Positions 29,835 through 50,713 of a stretch of 64,000 nt of DNA are shown one piece after another (the stretch's first letter is position 1; each line of letters starts with the position of its first letter). This stretch comes from Vitrella brassicaformis CCMP3155 (taxonomy: Eukaryota; Protista; Chromerida). The stretch spans positions 62,001-126,000 of the forward strand of contig CDMY01000718.1 in NCBI GenBank assembly GCA_001179505.1. The letters are read 5' to 3'. Made by a program: the position numbers and the translations under genes. The notes under the pieces were generated by a model, which made no database searches, was not told the origin of the DNA, and saw nothing but the letters and a program-made list of their open reading frames with translations.

Positions 29835-31762
29835 ATGGCGGCTGCACGTCCTTCTGATCATCAGACCCTGCAGCAGCAGAGCTCGAGAGGCATGGTCGTG
29901 TTGGGGATGGACCAAGAAGGTCGACAAACGGATGACGGCGAGCACCGCACAAACGACAAACCAACTCATCCGTATTTGCTGATATCGCCACTGTGGCAAT
30001 CTACAGGTCCGTTAACCGTGCTCAATGCCTTATCCTTTGGCAGTTCCTCCTCCTTCACGACGCGAGCTTTGGTCGACATGAATTTCAAGCTCGCACACAA
30101 TCTAAGGTCCAAGGCAGGTCAAAGCAGGGCAACACGACGCACGGGGCATGGAAGTGTGACATCTGGCGCGATCTGCATTGGAATGGCGTCAGCAGGCAGC
30201 CGGACCATCGCCGATGCGCTCCGCGCGTGTGATCCCCGCGACATTCTGGACATGTCATGCCGTGAGCCCGTCACCAACTCGCCCTTCGGCCACACGGCAG
30301 TGACCAAGCTGGAGATCTTCAGGCGGATACGGCAGCTGGGCATGAGGAATGTGGCAGCTCTTGCCTGGTATGACGACTACTGCCCGGTGGAGGACCAGTT
30401 CCTGCAGCTGCTGATGGCCGAGGAGCCTCGGCTAAATGGAATCGTCGTCATGTTCCCGGCAGGTCTGAGCACATGAGTGCATTCAAGCATTGTGGTGATT
30501 GAACCTTCTCATTACGTCTTGTGGTGTCTGTCTGCAGGTGACCAGTCGGCGCTCGCGAAGCTGCGGGCATCGTCCATCCCCAATGTGTTCATCGACGTCT
30601 ACCTCTCACCCCGCAATCAGCGCGGCGCTGTCGACGCATCAGTCAGCCCCCAGACCCACATCCAGCAGACCCTTCAGTCGATTCTGGAGCACTTCAAGGC
30701 CATCAACAGGCAGCGGCAGCCACCTCCAATCAACCTTGATGGGAAGTATCGCTACCACATCTACGTCAATCTGGTGGACCTGTGCGATGCGCCCATTGGG
30801 ACGCCGGCCACTGATGCCACCATCGCCTACCTCAAGGGAGCTAGTGCCGTGGTGCCCAACGTGACGCACATCTGTTTTGAGGAGTTCAGGGGCAATTGGA
30901 CGCACGAGAAATACGGAGAGGTGGCGGCCCTACTCAGGTGAAGTGTCAGCCGAAGCATTGCCAGCACGGCTGATGGATTGCAAATGCCTCTTGTCTGTTT
31001 TCATTCAGGTCGCATTTCCCTCGCGGCCGCTACAAGCTGCTCGTCCATGCCCACGCTGGCGCAGCGGCCAACGACACGGGCGCGTCCACTCTGGAAGCTG
31101 TCAAGCACGGGGCGGACGGCATCTGGTCGGCCTTTCTGCCCGACGCAGCCCAGATTGGCCACAACTCCTCCATTCGTTTCCTCAGCGACCTCTGGCACCA
31201 CGACCATCCCACTGTGGATCACTACTACTCATTCGACAAAGTGAGCAGACACACACGGGGAAAGATCGCTGAAGAATTTGGTGTGTCTTCGGTGCTTCAG
31301 ATGATCCCATTGGCGCGCGAGCTGCATGAGCTGAGCTTCCCGGGCGTCGCCATCGATCCGCTGTGCCCCATCTATGGCGTTCACGCCTCTGCCTGGGTCA
31401 ATCAGGCCTTCAGACACCAAGACAACTCGCCACACGCATTCCCGGCTCAACTGGTGAGCTACTTGCACGTTGATAAAATAGCAACCAACCCGATTGTGCC
31501 TGTCTGGTATGAATTCTCGTGTCAGTTTGGCGGTTGTAATCGTTCGCGCATCGCTCCAATGATCTCCGACGACGCCACGATTGCCGGGCGAGTGGGCGAG
31601 GTGGTCGGCAGGTCCTTTACCCGGCTGCCGCTCGAGAGGCAGCACGAGGTCGCTCGACGGATGCGTCGATGTATGCACGCCGTGCTGGCCGATGGGCGAC
31701 GATATGACTTTGATAATCCCGCTATCGTCAAGTGGATCTACCGACACGTATGTGACGACTGA
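29835..31762 (+). CDS. DRE-TIM metallolyase (HMGL-like/pyruvate carboxyltransferase fold) of an uncharacterised family
   Basis: ILDMSCREP...GHTAVTKLEIFRRIRQLGMRNV resembles the ILDxxLRxG...EEKLEIA..L..LG start of DRE-TIM barrels. LLVHAHAG...TLEAVKHGADGIWSAF carries the HxH metal motif and the AV.AGA.. strand. GT-AG introns are in phase. Confidence 0.65.
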
Positions 31763-31985
31763 CAGGCCATGAAAGCGAGTTTTCACCTGCTGTGGTTTCC
31801 TTCAGGTCTGTTCGCTGCGTGCTGATGAGGAAGTCACAGCCCCGTCGGCGCAGACAGCGCCTTTGCCGGCGATCCTCGACTCGCAGCCACTGCCTGGGAC
31901 TCAAAGGTGACGATGAAGGCAGCGAATTGCACTCATTGGAGTGACAATATTGTACGTTTCCTTTGTCAGGGTCGTTGGTGTGCCG

Positions 31986-34900
31986 ATGGCGTTGGAGGGT
32001 GACACCGCCATGGCTGACGAACAGAATATGGAGATCGATCCTTACTCAGACAGGTAAGCAACCACAGTCCTCGTCACTGCACGTCATCACGTCACGGTCA
32101 TGCTCCTTCTGTCCAGGTCATCTGACGCATCAGAGGGAGGCGGCGATGCATCCGCGATACATCCGGCCCCGCCGTCGACGGCTCTCCAGAGCCCCGACCA
32201 AGACTGGCGCAGCAGGCACAGCGGCCGGGCCAACACTGCGCCGTCTGAGCCGTACAAGACGCCTCCAAATACGATGCAGCCGTACGTCGCACCGCCGCAG
32301 CGGGGACGGCTGCAGAATCTCCCGATGGAGGGGGGCGTACCCCCTGCCCCCACACGTACGCCCACACCGACGCCCAAGCGCAAGACCAACCTCCACACCG
32401 TGACAGAGAAAGCCGAGGGTGAGGCGGGTCCACCACCACCCACAACAGCAGCTGTTGCTGAGCCTGCCCGGGCTCCTGGACCAGCAACAGCTCACGCACC
32501 CGCACCAGTGTCATCGTCAGCGCCACCCCACCAGCAGCAGGGGCCTCCTGACGTGATTCCTTACCAGCCGGCCGCCATGATGCCCCTCGTCACAGCCCGA
32601 CCCCAGCACGGCCAGGCCAGTGCGGCGTCGGCAAGAGCCGCACCAGAGAAGCTGCCGAGTTCCTCGGCGCACTTGCTGCGGACGGACCGAGCATCTTCAT
32701 CCTTTGTACGTCCGCCGCCACCCGACCACGGCTCACCTGCCAACGTCAAGGCTATCCTCACCCACCATGCGACGAGGTACGGACGCGTCAAGGAGCCCAA
32801 GGACGTCACCCGTCTGCTGAGCATGCTGCAGTCGGTCATGGGGACTCAGGGAATCTCATCGACCAAGGTCCGTGGCTTGGAGAAGATGATGACGCCCACC
32901 TATATCAGCGAGACGCCCACCTTCATCAGCGAGACGCCCACCTTCATCGACGAGACGCTGCCCGTCCTGTGCGCCGTCCTGTCCAAGAGCGAATTCAGCT
33001 TCCCCCTGCTGCCCCCATCCAGCCACCCACACAGTACAATGGAGAGAAAGATGACGGCTCGGCAGTGCTTCGCTCTCGTCGGTGCGGGCTTCCTCTGTCT
33101 GCACAAGCACTCGGATGGCAGCCTCAACTTCGATCGCCTTTTCGACAACCACACACCCTCTGGCAAGGCCAAGCTAGAGTGCCTCATCCACTACCTCAAC
33201 ACCATGGCGAGGGCGATCAGGCAGGGCAACATCACCGAGACGGAGAGAGTTGTCATCTTCCAAGCACTCGACAGTCCCGGGGCGGGGCTTCAGGATTTGG
33301 CGGGGCTGACCGCCCCTCTGATGGACGTGCACTTCATCCAGGGGACTAGTGAATCTATCTTCACCTCGAATGGCATCCGGGGTGACTTCGCCAATGCCCA
33401 CATCGGTGGCGGGACACTGGAAGACGGTTTAGGCACGCAGACCTGCACATGCACAGGCAAACATCTGCGCGCGCATCTGCATGTGTGTCTTCGCCTTGCT
33501 GTGTGTGTGTGTGTGCGGCCTGTCAGGTGCGATGGAGGAGGAGATTCTCTTCTCGACCGAGCCGGAGTGTCTCGTCGCCCGTTACCTATTCCCCAGGCCC
33601 ATGGGGCCCACTGAGGCCTTCATGATCGTCGGCTCCAAGACATTCAGCAAGACGACGCGCTACGGCCGTGGCCCGCTCCGCTTCGCCGGCCCTGCCCACG
33701 ACACCGCCACAATGAGACACATCGATGGCCATCCGGTTCTGAGCAAGTACATCGTGGCCTTCGATGCCGTCAACTTTGGCAAGCAGGGGGGCGGTCAGCA
33801 GTACGACGAGACGTGCGTGCTGCGGGAGCTCAACAAGGCATACACGGCCTTCCACTGCAACAGCCTGACGGTCGTCAGTGGCATGCCATTCGCGACGGGT
33901 GAGAAAGCCACACACACACACGCGACACTTCACCTGGGTGAGTCTGTGTCTGTGTATGTGTCCCTGCAGGCAACTGGGGGTGCGGTGTGTTTGGTGGCGA
34001 CCCACAGTGGAAGTTCCTCATCCAGTGGTGTGCTGCGAGTCTCGCTGGCCGACAGCTGCAGTACTACCCGCGAGGCGAGCAGAGCCTCATTGGCGCCGAG
34101 GACTTCATGCACAGGCTGAAGGACGCTGGATGCCGCACGGTGGGCGGGCTGGTCCAGCTGATGTGTGATGGGCGCACACGGAGGGCGGTCGGGCCTCACA
34201 TGTCGGCGTTCGATGCCGTCATGACGACTCTCATGGAGCGAAGCCGACCATCCCCACCACCACTGGTAAGCTGCTCCACACGCCTGTGCGAATCGATCAC
34301 ACTCTGTGTGTGTGTGTATGTCATAGCCTCGCACTCCATCCCCTCCACCATCCCTCCAGCAGCACTGGCATCCACCCGCACTGGCCGATTTGATGCCTCC
34401 GCCGCAGACCCAGGAAGCCCGCCAACACGACAAGGTGAGCCAAGCCGTTAAGTGGAGCTGCAAGACAGCAGATACATTGCTGCACTTGTGTGTGTGTCTG
34501 CAGGAAGTGTCTGCGGCGCCTCCAAAGGTGACGAGCGAGGCGGCGAGTGGCGACCAAAAAGAAGACGAAAGCCCGAGAGAGGTGCGTTGGCTGTGGATAT
34601 GTGCGCGTGAGCACCGACGTGGGTCTGTGTTTCGCTCTCCTGTGCCGTGGTTGGCAGGGTGGCTGTGCTCCGATGGAGGACACGACCGACACCAAGTCCA
34701 GCGTGGAGGGGGACGACGATATGGACATCGACACGGCCAAAGCGGCGGCGACGGATGAGGAAACCACACCGCTCCTCTCTGCAGCACAGAAGAGTGGCGA
34801 CAGCATGTAAGCACCCACAGAGACGCACACACCGCAGAGACCGGAGCGAACGGATCGTGGCTGTGTCTGTGTGCCTATGGTGGTGGTGCCAGGATCGATC

Positions 34901-35996
34901 ACATCTTCAAGTACGTGCCGACGGCGCACACTCGTCCCTCCAAGGTGGAGCTTAAGGGCTCGTTCGACGGCTGGCATGGCGAGTATCCGATGCACTGGTC
35001 TGCGGGGGAGCACAACTGCTTCGTGCTGCCCTTCCCGCTGCCGCCCGGCAGGTACACGTACAAGTTCATCGTCGACGGCAGATGGGTGTTTTCCAGCAAG
35101 CAGCCAACAGACCAAGATCGAGATGGCAATGCAAACAATGTCGTGGTCATCGGATAGACAGACACATCGATGCCATCGCAAGGCAAAGGATGCTAACAAC
35201 ACCACCTCCACTACCGAAGGTATTACCAGCCGCTTTTCCACGCCGGCCTGCGTCAATCAGATTTGAGTCCTTGCGTGTGTGCAGCCTCCCCTTCAATCAG
35301 GAACCAACAAACGAGCAAGCACACAGGGGAACCAGCCATATCTGCACGCTGCTCCAGCTCAGACCCCCCCAGCCTCATCCTTTGCTGCATCGCTCGTCTT
35401 TGCTCCGACTCCGGCTCCCTCGACCTCCGCTGCTCCGGCTCCCGAAGGCCGAGGGCAAGGGCTGGCAGCACGACCACCGACACACAAACGTGACGGATAC
35501 GGCATGGTGACGCCGCCTATGGTGAGATCCAAGCTGGAGACAGCTCGCACGTTGCTGCCCTTATGTTGGTACGTGTGTCAGGCAAAGTCTGCATCGGAGA
35601 GTCACGGCAGGATGGACGTCGACACGGCCAATGCGGGCGGCAACAAGTGAGCATGCACAAAGACGAGGGCACACACAGCGCTGGGAAGAAAGGGGCGTTT
35701 CTGGCTGTGTTGTCAGGGTCAACCATGTATTCGAGTACGTGCCGATGAAGCATCGTCGGCCCGCTAAGGTGGAGCTCAAGGGCTCTTTCGACGACTGGCG
35801 CAGTCGTTACGAGATGCACTGGTCGCCCGAGAAGAAATCCTACGTGCTGCCTCTCTCGCTGCCCCCTGGCAAGCACACCTACAAATTCATCGTCGATAGC
35901 ATGTGGACATGTGCATACACGAAACCGAAGGACGAAGACCGACACGGGAATATCACTAATGTCGTCACCATCCGGCCAGACGGACAGGCAGTGTGA
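31986..35996 (+). CDS. PARG: Poly(ADP-ribose) glycohydrolase with C-terminal CBM48 (AMPK-beta-type glycogen-binding) domain(s)
   Basis: KAKLECLIHYL, DFANAHIGGGTLEDG|AMEEEILF, IVAFDA, RELNKAYTAF, ATG|NWGCGVFGGDPQWKFLIQWCAAS. Phase-compatible linker exons lead to KVELKGSFDGW...LPPGRYTYKFIVDGRW...DGNANNV, with a stop at 35157. A second CBM48 exon lies at 35717-35996. Confidence 0.85.
32892..32954 (+). repeat. Coding tandem repeat, 3 x 21 nt (TPTYISE-TPTFISE-TPTFIDE) inside PARG
   Basis: acgcccacctatatcagcgag / acgcccaccttcatcagcgag / acgcccaccttcatcgacgag read directly. Confidence 0.95.
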
Positions 35997-36899
35997 GAGA
36001 CGTACGTGGGTTTGGCTTGCGTAGTGTGAGATCAGTCGTAGCCTCGCAGACGGATGACATTTTTACCAGCGAACGGCTGCCTATGCGCCTTCGTGCAGTG
36101 CCTCCGTTTTTTGGCACACGGAGATTTCTGTGTGTTGTGGGACTTGGCGTGCAGTGCGTGTGGTATGGTGTGCGAAGGTCAACACAGACCTTCCATCGAG
36201 CGGCTCACATTTGGCAGCCGACGTGTGTGTTTATGAGTGTTTGCGAGTTTATCCACAGTGCACTGGGGATGCATGAATGTGTTGTCGCGGATGCACTGTG
36301 TCGTGTTGGTCATTAGGGCTGTTGGAAGCTAGGGACGCCGGGTGAGCAGATGGCACACGTGAGCTGATGTGAGGGATGCATTAACGGACGCTGCATGCTT
36401 GTCGGATCGTAGCAAGACGTTTTTCATTGCAATGAAGAGAACGTGACTGGTCTGTGTGTCTGTCTGTCATCTCTGATCGTGGACCAAGGCAGGCCATGTA
36501 CACGAAAGGGGCGGCAGTAAGTGAACTCGTGCCGTCCATCTAATCAATCACATCCATCCAATTTGCTGTGCATGCAATGAGCTGCAACAAGCTGCAAGCT
36601 ATCTCTCTGCTGGCTGGCTGGGCCGCTGCCCGCGGCGGATATATGCCACATATGCACATTGAGCCCACGAGCCGAGTGTATTGGTGTATGGTGTCTTTGG
36701 GGGTGTGGTGTGTTGGAGGGGCCGCATCAGTCGACACATACTGCAACATCCATCCATCCATCCATCTCGTTGCCTCGACAGACAGCCTGACCCGGCCAAC
36801 GGCCACACACAGCCTGACCCAACGGCCACACACAGACACCAACACACACCATGAGGCCGGACGGTGGATGCATTGCTCTGCCTTTTCCCGCCTCACACT

Positions 36900-39431
36900 C
36901 TAGGAACGACGCGTTGCAGTTACTTCAACTGAACCCCATTGACTGCGTGTGCCGATGGTGAAGTTGTCACTGACCTCTGTCCGAACGGCCTCACGAACGG
37001 CGTCACGAACGGCCTCGCTGCCATGCACGGTCAGCGTCAAACTCCGCAGGCTCCGCACGCCGCCGACGATGGACGAGATGCCGCCGCGGATGAGCTCGGC
37101 AGCAGCAGAGGCCCCCAAGCCGTCGGGCACTGAGGAATAAGACAGACACGGGAGCAATGCACGCACACAAGATGATCCGCCAGAATCGTCTGTTCCGGTG
37201 CGGTGCATACCTGACAAATGCATGCCTATGCGGCCAATCGACGGGAAGCCGTCCGACCTCCAGCCGTCCAATGCACCCCCAGTGAGACTGACCTCATCAA
37301 CATTGACACTGCCCACCTCCGTCCCCGCCCCGAGGCCCTCCAACACGCCTATCATGCCCCCTGAACTCACACCTCGGCCAATCCACACCCACTCGACCAT
37401 CCTGGGCATCTTCTCTGCCAGCAGCCGACCTGAAGAATCGCCAAGAGCACTGCAGATGTACAGCTCAGTGCCCGTTAGGAACTGCTGCAGGTGGTTGATG
37501 ATGGTGGGCTGCGGTGAAGGGGCGCCGGGAGGGGGGTCGAAACCATGGGCGTTGCGGACAATCACGCGCTCGGCCTTGTCGAATGTGAGTGTCTTGGCGA
37601 TGTCGATGGCCGCCTGGCTGGGGCTGTCGACGGGGTGGGTGAGGTCATGCTGGCTGATGACGTAGTTGATCTGTGTGGCCTCCCTTGCGGCCGCCTGGAT
37701 GGCCATCATGAAGAAGGGGGAGGGGTGGGAGGGGATCGCGTCGCTGTAGAAGAGGGACAGGTCGAAGCGGTGCAGCCTCGAAATCACGGGGTGCGGTGTC
37801 GACGTCACAGTGATGCGCGCGTCGGGCGTGCAGCATTCCTTGACGAGGCTGTCGACTGCGACCAGGGAGTCGATGGCCGTGTGGCCGTAGAGCGGTGGGA
37901 TCTGCACGTGCAGCTCTTTCAGCGACTTGCGGCAGCCGCGAGATGTGAGCACATCCTACAAGACAAACAACACAAGACATGAAATGCGTACCCACAGGCA
38001 CGTGTGCGGCCTCTCTTGTGTGTGATGGCTGCCTACCTTTAGCCGCTCAACTCCCGCCTGGTACCGCTGGTGTGTCTGTCCATCCCGATGCTCAATCATT
38101 CCGATGCTCTGCAGCTGCCGGAGCGGCCCCGGCTGCCCAGCCGCTGCCTTGGGGATGTGCTCGAGCACCGCCGCCCACTGCTTACCCCACAGCTGGCCGC
38201 CCACGCGCTGCAGACACCGTGACGAGCTAATGAAGCTGCCCAGCTCATCCGGCCCCCACCCTGTCTGCTCCACTGTTTCGAGTGACGGCATCCGCCACCC
38301 TCTGTTGGCCAGGTCAGAGTGATGGCGGACGGCTCCTGTGACGGCCTTGAGTGAGGGGAGGGTGGGGGGCTCGGTGAGTAGAGGAGGGGTAGGGGGACGC
38401 TGTCGCTTCTCTGCCCTGCGGCTGATGCTGGTGTTGCCGGTGCTGCCGGTGCTGAAGGTGATGGTCTCGAGCGAACCCTCCGACTTGTGTTGTCGCCCAG
38501 CCGCATGACCCTCCACAACGGCCATCATGTTGTCCAGGCACGACACATCACCCTTGAGTGTGATCAGATTGACGAGCCGTCTGCCTAACTTCAATGCCGC
38601 CTCGCTTGCCGTCTGGCTCCAAAATCGACGGTCTGCATCGGTGGCGGCGTCTATGGTGGCGTGTGTGTGCTGGTGGACGGCTCCGTTGCGGATGGGGGAG
38701 CGGTGCGGGAAGATGGCCGACAGCTCGCGGGGGGTCATGAAGCCAAAGAGTGACACCTGGTGGTCATCGGCAAAACCATCAGGGGCCTGAAAGAGGGAGA
38801 GGGGGGCATAAAAGTGGGCGGGCTGGGCTGCGTGTAGTGCTCACCTTGTGTGTCTTTGGTTTCTTGTTTGGAGGCGTCGTGGTGTCACGTGAGGGGGGCA
38901 GACCGGTGAGGAAGTCGGGGAACCAGCCCCAGGAGTCGGGTCGGTTGTCGAGGGTGTCGTCGGGCCGGACGATCAGGCCAAGTGTCCATCCCGAGCTGTG
39001 CCGCTCCTGGATGCGGACCCTCGTTCCCTCGGCCAGCGAGAGCTGCTGCCCACCACCGCCCTCGGCGGTCCACTCCTCGGCTATCGTCACCTCCACTGCC
39101 GGCACCAGCACCTCAAACCTCTCACGGCAACCGGCAACCTCCGTCATGTGCACCTTGGTCCCTCTACTGGTCTCCTCCGGTCTGCGATCGACGACAGCCG
39201 TCACCCACTTGTGCTTGCCCTCCCTCTTGGTCTTCGACACCATCAGCACACGAGTGCCCTCTCGGTAGCGAGTGAAGGGTGGCATCAGCTGGTGGGTGAG
39301 ACGATCAAGCAAACGAGTCGTCACGTACCCACAACACACCGTGATGATGCATGTGCACTCGTGCCTTATTGGCTCACCGGCAGATGCGGCAGATTGAAGT
39401 GGCAGGCAGATGCTGACGAGACCGCCGCCAT
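36900..39431 (-). CDS. Lineage-expanded family protein (copy 2): beta-rich module, SH3 domain, F-box-like segment, divergent repeat region
   Basis: Paralog of 22340-25323. The exon at about 38850-39290 encodes EEWTAEGGGGQQLSLAEGTRVRIQERHSSGWTLG...WGWFPDF, an SH3 pattern (LSL..G..V.I.E..SGW..G...GWFP). ATG at 39431 in gccATGg context. Confidence 0.75.
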
Positions 39432-50352: not shown

Positions 50353-50713
50353 ATCGGTGGCGGGACGCTGGACTACGGTACGCAGACACAAACAGGCACA
50401 GGAAAACATGTGAGTGCACATCTGCATGTGTGTCTGCGCCTTGCTGTGTCTGCGTATGTCCTGGCAGGTGCGGTGCAGGAGGAGATCTTGTTTTCGATCG
50501 AGCCGGAGTGCCTCGTCGCACGCCACATTTCCCCAAAGCAATGCAGCCCACAGAGGCCTTCCTATCGTCGGCTCCAAGACATTCAGCAAAACACCTGGCC
50601 ACGGCCGCGAGACCCTCAGCTTCGCCGGTCACGCCCACCACACCGCCCCCATGAGACACATCGATGGCCATCCGGTTCTGAACAGGTCATCGTGGTGCCG
50701 TCAACTTTGGCAA
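50353..50713 (+). pseudogene. PARG: Frameshifted PARG catalytic-domain fragment, paralogous to 33400-33790 and including the homologous intron
   Basis: IGGGTLDYG|AVQEEILFSIEPECLVAR, then near-identical DNA to the intact PARG (atcgtcggctccaagacattcagcaa; atgagacacatcgatggccatccggttctga) with several small deletions that break the frame. The intron sequence is also similar. Confidence 0.85.

What the first reader, a model, noticed from the sequence alone, without database searches (positions are those of the whole stretch)
31986..35996. PARG fused to glycogen/starch-binding CBM48 domain(s)
Seen: four linker exons (34327-34434, 34504-34581, about 34660-34806, and 34893 onward) join the PARG catalytic domain in phase to a complete AMPK-beta-type CBM48 (KVELKGSFDGW...PPGRYTYKFIVDGRW). 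Knowledge: CBM48 targets proteins to alpha-glucan granules, and PARG is normally nuclear/cytosolic and reverses PARylation. Inference: ADP-ribose erasing may be coupled to storage-polysaccharide granules or carbon status. I do not know this architecture from other organisms.
Basis: partly seen in the sequence, partly recalled or inferred. Interest (0 to 1): 0.75.

Follow-up and report, generated by a model that had tools for sequence, protein, structure and literature searches.

The report
Starch-binding module fused to PARG enzyme
In the alga-like protist Vitrella brassicaformis, an expressed 1351-residue protein joins an enzyme that removes poly(ADP-ribose) from proteins to a starch/glycogen-binding module, a pairing found only in this species, which hints (untested) that this signalling mark is handled at the cell's starch granules.

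Summary
Pfam finds a PARG catalytic domain and two AMPK-beta-type CBM48 modules.

Two corrections are needed:
- The gene starts at 30183, not 31986. RNA contigs splice an upstream domain of about 430 residues in frame onto PARG. That domain is probably an isopropylmalate/homocitrate-synthase-like TIM barrel.
- The second CBM48 (35717-35996) is not in frame with the first. It belongs to a 203-residue ORF that starts 32 nt after the stop, although RNA contigs run across both.

The genome is Vitrella brassicaformis CCMP3155. The public model CEM31316.1 (1351 aa) already carries this architecture. Three paralogs on the same 287-kb contig also pair PARG with CBM48, and one of them is matched letter for letter by a transcriptome ORF.

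Among about 300 other PARGs examined, none outside Vitrella has a CBM48. No paper mentions the pairing. This scan had flagged the paralogs elsewhere in the genome.

The PARG catalytic residues and four of five CBM48 glucan-contact residues are kept. Vitrella starch is cytosolic. Targeting of PARG to starch is plausible but untested.

The parts
30183..31747 (+). Five exons (30183-30462, 30538-30937, 31009-31240, 31301-31453, 31526-31747) encoding the N-terminal domain of about 430 residues. It is probably a divergent IPMS/homocitrate-synthase-like (DRE-TIM) barrel.
   Evidence: The exon translations are exact substrings of public protein P0262. There is no hit in Pfam, NCBIfam or PDB sequences. 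The language-model look-alikes are homocitrate synthase and HMGL-like clusters, scoring 0.90-0.94. The AF2 model is poor (pLDDT 46) but shows an alternating strand/helix pattern. Its Foldseek top hits are MAM, IPMS, homocitrate and citramalate synthases at E 1.5e-3 and TM about 0.4. The only sequence relative found is the Vitrella protein P0297.
31806..32053 (+). Two short bridging exons (31806-31906, 31970-32053) that splice the N-terminal domain in frame onto the large PARG exon.
   Evidence: Contigs X6 record 15 and X7 record 20 place 182 unlisted letters, plus 3 ambiguous ones, between 31747 and 32117. The sum 101 + 84 = 185 nt fits these exons. Both are in frame and are present in P0262.
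32117..33426 (+). Large exon. About 260 residues of Pro/Ala-rich low-complexity linker are followed by the PARG helical domain and the first part of the macro domain, up to the GGG of the signature. The public model ends this exon at 33432, using a GC donor that adds Leu-Gly.
   Evidence: PARG_cat_N is found. In the paralog P0001 the homologous intron has a GT donor at the position equivalent to 33427, so 33426 is the better exon end. This junction was not among the joints listed.
33527..34265 (+). Two exons (33527-33898, 33970-34265) encoding the PARG macro-domain core. It holds the catalytic Glu-Glu (read E-E-E here, where other PARGs have Q-E-E), the Tyr-clasp tyrosine and the NWGCGVFGGD diphosphate loop.
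   Evidence: PARG_cat_C scores 169.9 bits on the whole protein. RNA joints 33898/33970 and 34265/34327 are.
34327..34806 (+). Three linker exons (34327-34434, 34504-34581, 34658-34806), Pro-rich and then acidic. They contain no domain.
   Evidence: GT..AG joints are seen in RNA contigs of X1, X6 and X7. The exons are in phase. The linker is homologous in paralog P0001.
34893..35157 (+). Last exon: a complete AMPK-beta-type CBM48 followed by the TAG stop at 35155-35157.
   Evidence: AMPK1_CBM scores E 7e-21. The alignment to the AMPK beta-2 CBM (4y0g) keeps the Trp, Lys, Trp and Asn glucan contacts. The 34806/34893 joint is. RNA contigs match the genome through the stop with no differences (records 18 and 22). 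The same stop context occurs in paralogs P0001 and P0151.
35190..35996 (+). Separate downstream ORF of 203 residues (exons 35190-35219, 35285-35521, 35582-35646, 35717-35996). It ends in the second CBM48, in a different frame from the PARG ORF. It arose by tandem duplication of the unit made of linker exon 7 plus the CBM48 exon.
   Evidence: It is a public gene call carrying PF16561. Joints 35219/35285, 35521/35582 and 35646/35717 are. X7 record 22 runs from 35004 through the TAG into this ORF and on to 36813. The two CBM48 are 57% identical.

Best explanation
This is one real, expressed Vitrella brassicaformis gene (window 30183-35157, 14 exons, 1351 aa, public CEM31316.1). Its product has five parts in order: a divergent IPMS/homocitrate-synthase-like barrel, a disordered linker, a canonical PARG that looks catalytically competent, a Pro-rich and acidic linker of about 190 residues, and a C-terminal AMPK-beta-type CBM48.

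Shown: the exon structure, the in-frame junctions in RNA, the domain identities, the conserved catalytic and glucan-contact residues, and the existence of three more PARG-CBM48 paralogs on the same contig.

Inferred: the CBM48 tethers the enzyme through its long flexible linker to cytosolic starch granules or soluble alpha-glucan. ADP-ribose would then be removed from granule-associated targets, which would tie NAD+/ADP-ribose signalling to carbon storage.

The fusion arose once in this lineage, because the linkers are homologous between paralogs. It was then duplicated, and the 3' module (linker plus CBM48) was exchanged recently between this gene and P0001.

I put about 0.9 on the architecture being real and about 0.5 on glucan targeting being its role.
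For: - Pfam domains are found.
- All junctions from the PARG core (33898/33970) to the CBM48 exon are seen as GT..AG joints in spliced contigs of three runs. Depths along the chain are consistent: X7 10, 19, 24, 21 and X6 39, 54, 55, 63, 61.
- The phase bookkeeping gives 2622 nt from 32010, in frame. The full model of 4050 nt matches P0262 exon by exon.
- The paralogs P0001, P0151 and P0152 all carry PF20811, PF05028 and PF16561. P0151 is identical to an MMETSP transcript ORF.
- The CBM48 is under purifying selection against P0152, with dN/dS 0.40, similar to the PARG exons at 0.26-0.50.
- The catalytic Glu-Glu, the Tyr clasp and the diphosphate loop are kept.
- The CBM48 keeps the Trp, Lys, Trp and Asn contacts.
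- Vitrella starch lies in the cytosol around the pyrenoid (preprint 10.64898/2026.09.25.754361), and the protein has no obvious N-terminal targeting extension (my reading of the P0262 sequence).
Against: - No single RNA contig or read spans PARG to CBM48.
- The contig holding the exon 6/7 junction is shared with paralog P0001, so the phasing rests on depth and on the genome order of the exons.
- These runs are contigs whose RNA nature is inferred from their splicing.
- The first residue of the QEE signature is Glu here.
- One of the five AMPK-beta glucan contacts (Leu146) is Asp.
- dN/dS of the CBM48 against P0001 is 0.73, on few changes.
- CBM48 modules can also mediate protein contacts, as in AMPK.
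- Nothing shows binding to starch, PARG activity or localisation.
- The census outside Vitrella covered about 300 PARGs, not all of them.
Confidence: 0.55

Rival explanations
1. The CBM48 here is not a starch anchor. It would serve as a protein-contact module, as the AMPK-beta CBM does when it packs on the kinase domain. Or it would bind another sugar polymer, conceivably poly(ADP-ribose) itself, which is a ribose-ribose glycoside chain. In either case it would recruit PARG to a partner or substrate unrelated to starch.
For: Leu146 of the AMPK-beta contact set is not kept in any Vitrella copy. The paralogs carry other targeting modules (zinc fingers) at the N-terminus, and one of them sits beside a mini-PARP according to an earlier scan note. 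That points to a self-contained ADP-ribose writer/eraser system, not a carbon-metabolism one.
Against: The four residues that stack on and hydrogen-bond to the glucan in AMPK beta are kept in all four PARG-linked copies. The AMPK-beta C-terminal domain needed for the kinase complex is absent. The closest solved relatives after AMPK beta are the starch phosphatases LSF1 and SEX4.
Confidence: 0.2
2. The fusion is a lineage-specific by-product of a rapidly duplicating, recombining gene cluster and has little or no selected function. The CBM48 would be a passenger that is drifting.
For: - At least six PARG genes and one broken PARG exon relic (50467-50689) lie on one 287-kb contig.
- The 3' module shows signs of recent exchange: dS 0-0.14 against 0.31-0.43 in the PARG exons, compared with P0001.
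- dN/dS is 0.73 for the CBM48 and 1.67 for exon 7 against P0001.
- This copy has E in place of Q in the QEE signature.
Against: - An intact 1351-codon ORF spans 14 exons and is expressed.
- CBM48 dN/dS is 0.40 against the more distant paralog P0152.
- The glucan-contact residues are kept in four copies.
- The stop context is conserved in three paralogs.
Confidence: 0.15
3. PARG and CBM48 are separate genes merged by read-through transcription and by annotation, so the fused protein is not the main product.
For: Genes in this region are tightly packed. Contigs also run from the first CBM48 exon straight into the next ORF, so read-through does occur here. No single contig spans PARG to CBM48.
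Against: Four consecutive GT..AG introns keep the frame open across about 630 nt of linker. No in-frame stop follows the PARG domain once it is spliced. The same layout occurs in three paralogs. A de novo transcript ORF for P0151 is identical to the genome model across both domains.
Confidence: 0.05

Closest known systems
Canonical eukaryotic poly(ADP-ribose) glycohydrolase (human PARG 4a0d/6o9x, Drosophila 8adj, Tetrahymena 4epp)
   Same: It has the PARG helical domain plus macro domain, the GGG...EE signature, the Tyr-clasp tyrosine and the NWGCGxFGGD diphosphate loop. The match to 8adj is E 4e-35.
   Different: The first signature residue is Glu instead of Gln in this copy. The enzyme sits between an N-terminal IPMS-like domain and a C-terminal CBM48. 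Among about 300 PARGs seen, the accessory domains include WWE, PUB, IQ, RING/B-box, PNK3P, ADP-ribosylglycohydrolase, uridine kinase and TPMT, but no CBM48 outside Vitrella.
AMPK/SNF1 beta-subunit carbohydrate-binding module (PF16561; 4y0g, 1z0n)
   Same: This is the best Pfam and PDB match for both CBM48 modules. The Trp, Lys, Trp and Asn glucan contacts align.
   Different: There is no AMPKBI C-terminal domain, so it is not an AMPK beta subunit. Leu146 is replaced. The module is at the C-terminus of an enzyme, not in a kinase scaffold.
CBM48-tagged starch enzymes and adaptors (SEX4 and LSF1 glucan phosphatases; PTST proteins)
   Same: The logic matches: a CBM48 tethers a catalytic or adaptor part to starch granules. 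SEX4 and LSF1 are the next-best solved matches at E about 2e-7. PTST is described in PMC4339375, whose title and abstract were seen.
   Different: Those proteins are plastid proteins of plants acting on the glucan or on starch synthases. Here the cargo is an ADP-ribose eraser and the starch is cytosolic.
Vitrella paralogs CEM31300.1 (P0001), CEM31365.1 (P0151) and P0152
   Same: They share the PARG-linker-CBM48 layout on the same contig. P0001 shares homologous linker exons and a near-identical 3' module.
   Different: They carry CxxC/His zinc-finger modules at the N-terminus where this gene has the 430-residue barrel. Only this gene is followed by a CBM48-only ORF.

Membership tests
Canonical PARG (Pfam PF05028 + PF20811) | Match to the PARG macro-domain and helical-domain profiles above the curated cut-offs | tested here: met
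   PARG_cat_C scores 169.9 bits against a cut-off of 26.3. PARG_cat_N scores 36.4 bits against 25.6, on P0262.
Canonical PARG (Pfam PF05028 + PF20811) | Catalytic signature GGG-X6-8-QEE with the two glutamates | tested here: met
   GGG followed by E-E-E aligns to the QEE of fly and human PARG, so both catalytic Glu are present and Gln is replaced by Glu. With the GT donor at 33427 the spacing equals that of the paralogs.
Canonical PARG (Pfam PF05028 + PF20811) | Tyr-clasp tyrosine (human Tyr795, numbering from my own knowledge) and the diphosphate-binding loop GNWGCGxFGGD | tested here: met
   The tyrosine aligns. NWGCGVFGGD is at residue 1055.
Canonical PARG (Pfam PF05028 + PF20811) | Hydrolysis of poly(ADP-ribose) | not testable with these tools
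   This needs an enzyme assay.
CBM48, AMPK-beta type (PF16561) | Profile match above the curated cut-off | tested here: met
   The first module scores 74.6 bits and the second 70.8 bits, against a cut-off of 26.8.
CBM48, AMPK-beta type (PF16561) | Glucan-contact residues (rat beta-1 Trp100, Lys126, Trp133, Leu146, Asn150; the list is from my own knowledge of the published structure) | tested here: met
   Four of the five align as identical in the first module and in the three paralogs, and Leu146 is not kept. In the second, separate module Asn150 is Thr.
CBM48, AMPK-beta type (PF16561) | Binding to alpha-1,4/1,6-glucan | not testable with these tools
   This needs a pull-down or ITC experiment.
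AMPK/SNF1 beta subunit | C-terminal alpha/gamma-binding domain (AMPKBI, PF04739) | tested here: not met
   There is no such hit on P0262 at E up to 1. The protein ends with the CBM48.
DRE-TIM metallolyase / HMGL-like (PF00682), for the N-terminal domain | Profile match to PF00682 or to a solved family member by sequence | tested here: not met
   There is no hit in Pfam, NCBIfam or PDB sequences, either alone or as a two-sequence profile.
DRE-TIM metallolyase / HMGL-like (PF00682), for the N-terminal domain | (beta/alpha)8 barrel resembling IPMS/homocitrate synthase, with an acidic metal ligand after strand 1 and His-x-His after strand 7 | tested here: inconclusive
   Atlas feature look-alikes score 0.90-0.94 and are all homocitrate, IPMS or HMGL-like clusters. 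Foldseek top hits are MAM, IPMS, HCS and CMS, but at E 1.5e-3, TM about 0.4 and on a model with pLDDT 46. His240-x-His242 and Glu28 are invariant between the two known members.

The most novel reading that the evidence does not exclude
Chromerid algae run an ADP-ribose writer/eraser system at the surface of cytosolic starch. A family of PARGs tethered by CBM48 would erase ADP-ribose from granule-bound proteins, or even from the glucan or ADP-sugar adducts. In this copy the PARG is also joined to an oxo-acid/acetyl-CoA-type barrel. NAD+ status and carbon storage would then be linked directly.
Probability: 0.15. Interest if true: 0.8.

Novelty: new variant of a known kind. Interest (0 to 1): 0.5.

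Why it matters
PARG is known as a nuclear and cytosolic eraser of PARP signalling. Its known accessory domains aim it at proteins or nucleic-acid contexts. A PARG family that carries a starch/glycogen-binding module would be the first genomic hint that ADP-ribosylation is used at storage-polysaccharide granules. Here the module is kept in four paralogs with intact sugar-contact residues, in an alga whose starch lies in the cytosol. The idea can be tested directly, because Vitrella starch can be purified and its bound proteome read. The models are already public but unnamed ('unnamed protein product'), and no paper in the searched library mentions the pairing. The finding is restricted to one species so far and has no functional data, which limits its weight.

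Tried and rejected
- **My first gene start (32010 or 31986).** I rejected it once contigs showed splicing from 31747 through two small exons into 32117.
- **My first end of exon 4 (34263).** It was off by two; 34265 restores the frame.
- **A fresh 1-nt deletion splitting a former two-CBM48 protein.** The alignment of the two units suggested this. I largely rejected it because the same stop context occurs in paralogs P0001 and P0151.
- **Programmed frameshifting at the stop.** I considered it from the sequence and rejected it. The needed shift is -1 and there is no slippery heptamer.
- **Sequence searches for the N-terminal domain.** Pfam by exon, Pfam on the whole, NCBIfam, PDB phmmer and a two-sequence profile all gave nothing.
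- **Structure prediction of the N-terminal domain.** Both jobs gave poor models, with pLDDT 45 and 46.
- **Atlas search with P0001.** It found only ordinary PARG clusters.
- **Paper searches.** PARG+CBM48, ADP-ribose glycohydrolase+Vitrella and PARG+chromerid gave nothing relevant.
- **Searching with a joined spliced model.** I searched exons by reference and then used the public protein P0262 returned by the word search.
Full report
**What is there.** The region is GC-rich (about 60%) eukaryotic DNA with short GT..AG introns. Pfam finds PARG_cat_N and PARG_cat_C in the ORFs between 32100 and 34448. It finds AMPK1_CBM, the AMPK-beta-type CBM48, twice: at 34915-35154 (E 7e-21) and at 35631-35993 (E 1e-19).

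**Exon structure.** From the sequence I derived these exons: 32117-33426, 33527-33898, 33970-34265, 34327-34434, 34504-34581, 34658-34806 and 34893-35157. Read in phase, they give an open frame from PARG into the first CBM48, ending at the TAG at 35155-35157.

**RNA evidence.**
- Eight public runs hold this stretch. I laid four of them on 31400-36900. Their contigs are spliced, so they derive from RNA, although the records do not say so.
- GT..AG joints are seen at 33898/33970, 34265/34327, 34434/34504, 34581/34658 and 34806/34893, in up to three runs each.
- X7 record 21 covers exon 3 to exon 6 in one piece.
- No single contig reaches from PARG to the CBM48.
- The contig with the exon 6/7 joint is shared with a close paralog. 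There its depth (103 in X7) equals the sum of the paralog branch (79) and this gene's branch (24).
- Along the chain the depths of this gene's own contigs are steady: 10, 19, 24, 21 in X7 and 39, 54, 55, 63, 61 in X6.
- The exon 2/3 joint was not among those listed.

**The gene is larger than the finding.** X6 record 15 and X7 record 20 join 31581-31747 to 32117 onward, with 185 intervening letters. That length equals exons 31806-31906 plus 31970-32053, and the frame stays open (my reading). Further upstream, canonical introns link 30183-30462, 30538-30937, 31009-31240, 31301-31453 and 31526-31747. The whole model is 4050 nt.

**Public model.** A word search with a paralog returned P0262, a 1351-residue public protein. 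Its accessions are CEM31316.1 and A0A0G4GM91, it comes from Vitrella brassicaformis CCMP3155, and it is labelled 'unnamed protein product / poly(ADP-ribose) glycohydrolase'. Every one of my 14 exon translations is an exact substring of it.

The only difference is at the exon 2 donor. The public model uses a GC donor at 33433 and adds Leu-Gly. The homologous intron in paralog P0001 has a GT donor at the position equivalent to 33427, which also restores the family's spacing in the signature.

I did not search with a joined model of my own. I searched exon by exon by reference, and then used P0262.

**The second CBM48.**
- The first CBM48 ends in a stop that stands in the RNA contigs with no differences (records 18 and 22).
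- The second CBM48 is in another frame. It belongs to a 203-residue ORF (35190-35219, 35285-35521, 35582-35646, 35717-35996) that the public annotation calls as a separate gene starting 32 nt after the TAG.
- X7 record 22 nevertheless runs from 35004 through the stop and all three introns to 36813. So RNA that carries the end of the PARG ORF continues into this ORF. The alternative is that the small gene's transcripts start inside the last PARG exon.
- Depth rises towards the 3' end in all three runs. That fits either 3' bias on one long RNA or an extra shorter transcript, and contigs cannot tell these apart.
- The second unit is a tandem duplicate of linker exon 7 plus the CBM48 exon, with the intron in the same phase. 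The two modules are 57% identical.
- An apparent 1-nt difference at the end of the first unit is not a fresh frameshift. The same stop context is shared with paralogs P0001 and P0151.

**Relatives and distribution.** I searched the PARG core exon against one representative per 50% cluster of about 15 billion proteins. It gave 433 hits at E up to 0.001. Among the best 150, only P0001 (Vitrella) contains a CBM48, by a permissive local phmmer.

Two word searches returned about 165 PARGs with precomputed Pfam. Only four proteins combine PF05028 with PF16561: P0001, P0151, P0152 and P0262. All four are on Vitrella contig CDMY01000718.1. Other PARGs carry WWE, PUB, IQ, RING/B-box, PNK3P and other domains, but never this one.

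P0151 is also recorded, letter for letter, as an ORF of an MMETSP transcript. That is independent transcript-level support for the pairing in a paralog.

The Atlas holds no large cluster with both families. No paper in the searched library pairs PARG with CBM48. Earlier first-stage notes of this scan had flagged the paralogs at the places I found them.

**Evolution within the cluster.** Against P0001, the PARG exons have dS 0.31-0.43, but the linker and CBM48 exons have dS 0-0.14. So the 3' module was exchanged or copied recently between the two genes. Against the more distant P0152, the CBM48 has dN/dS 0.40, like the PARG exons at 0.26-0.50. The paralogs differ at the N-terminus. P0001, P0151, P0152 and P0002 start with Cys/His zinc-finger modules, and only this gene has the 430-residue domain.

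**Are the domains functional?**
- *PARG.* The alignment to fly and human structures keeps the GGG, both catalytic glutamates, the Tyr-clasp tyrosine and the NWGCGVFGGD loop. The Gln of QEE is Glu in this copy only.
- *CBM48.* The alignment to AMPK beta-2 keeps the Trp, Lys, Trp and Asn that contact glucan, in this gene and in the three paralogs. The Leu is not kept. The separate second module has Thr at the Asn position.
- *Not an AMPK beta subunit.* There is no AMPKBI domain.

**The N-terminal domain.** No sequence search places it. Its only detected relative is the Vitrella protein P0297, which adds a TLDc domain. Three weak lines agree on an IPMS/homocitrate-synthase-like DRE-TIM barrel:
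- The language-model look-alikes score 0.90-0.94 and are all of that family.
- The strands and helices alternate, with His-x-His after the seventh strand.
- The Foldseek top hits are all of that family, but at E 1.5e-3 on a low-confidence model.

I rate this assignment at about 0.7.

**Mechanism.** Vitrella stores starch in the cytosol, wrapped around the pyrenoid (preprint 10.64898/2026.09.25.754361). The protein shows no obvious targeting extension. The simplest reading is that the CBM48, on a flexible linker of about 190 residues, holds an active PARG at starch granules or on soluble glucan. That is inference. The rivals are a protein-contact or PAR-binding role for the module, a drifting passenger in a fast-duplicating cluster, and an annotation or read-through merger, which I rate very unlikely.

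**Verdict.** The architecture is real, expressed, multi-copy and so far specific to Vitrella. It is already present in public, unnamed gene models but has not been described. The functional link to starch is plausible and readily testable, but no evidence for it exists yet.

Noticed in passing
window 50467-50689 (+): An isolated relic of the PARG core exon, 60-83% identical to the paralogs. It is broken by a frameshift, so the match continues in a second frame after about 25 residues. No other PARG exon or CBM48 lies nearby. It is probably a pseudogene fragment.
   Followed up: partly
window 33426-33433: The public model CEM31316.1 uses a GC donor at 33433, which inserts Leu-Gly into the GGG...EE signature. 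The paralog's homologous intron and the GT rule favour the donor at 33427. The joint was not among those listed from the RNA contigs.
   Followed up: partly
window 31525-31679: RNA contig X1 record 1 is a spliced copy of this N-terminal-domain exon with 13 differences (about 92% alike). So a second expressed gene carries a close copy of the domain. It is not P0297 (34% identical) and it is not in the paralog loci I fetched.
   Followed up: partly
window 34327-35157 versus L002 5860-6671: Against paralog P0001, the linker and CBM48 exons are far more alike (dS 0-0.14) than the PARG exons (dS 0.31-0.43). This is a mosaic that suggests recent gene conversion of the 3' module.
   Followed up: yes
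window 35004-36813: One RNA contig (X7 record 22) carries the end of the PARG ORF, its stop, and the whole downstream 203-residue CBM48 ORF with its three introns removed. This is either a two-ORF RNA or overlapping transcripts only 32 nt apart.
   Followed up: partly
window 33493-33519 and 36738-36766: GT/CA-rich simple repeats in an intron and downstream of the genes attract very deep pile-ups and many false long-range 'joints' in the contig lay-out (depth up to 4672). They are not splice events.
   Followed up: no
L002 2579-3232 (-) and 4001-6674 (+): Paralog P0001 (zinc finger, PARG, CBM48) sits head to head with a 165-residue gene that has no Pfam hit. An earlier scan note reads that gene as a mini-PARP sharing the same zinc finger.
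   Followed up: no
P0152 (L004 4001-7124): In this PARG-CBM48 paralog my pattern for GGG...[QE]EE found no match, so its catalytic signature may be altered. I did not look further.
   Followed up: no
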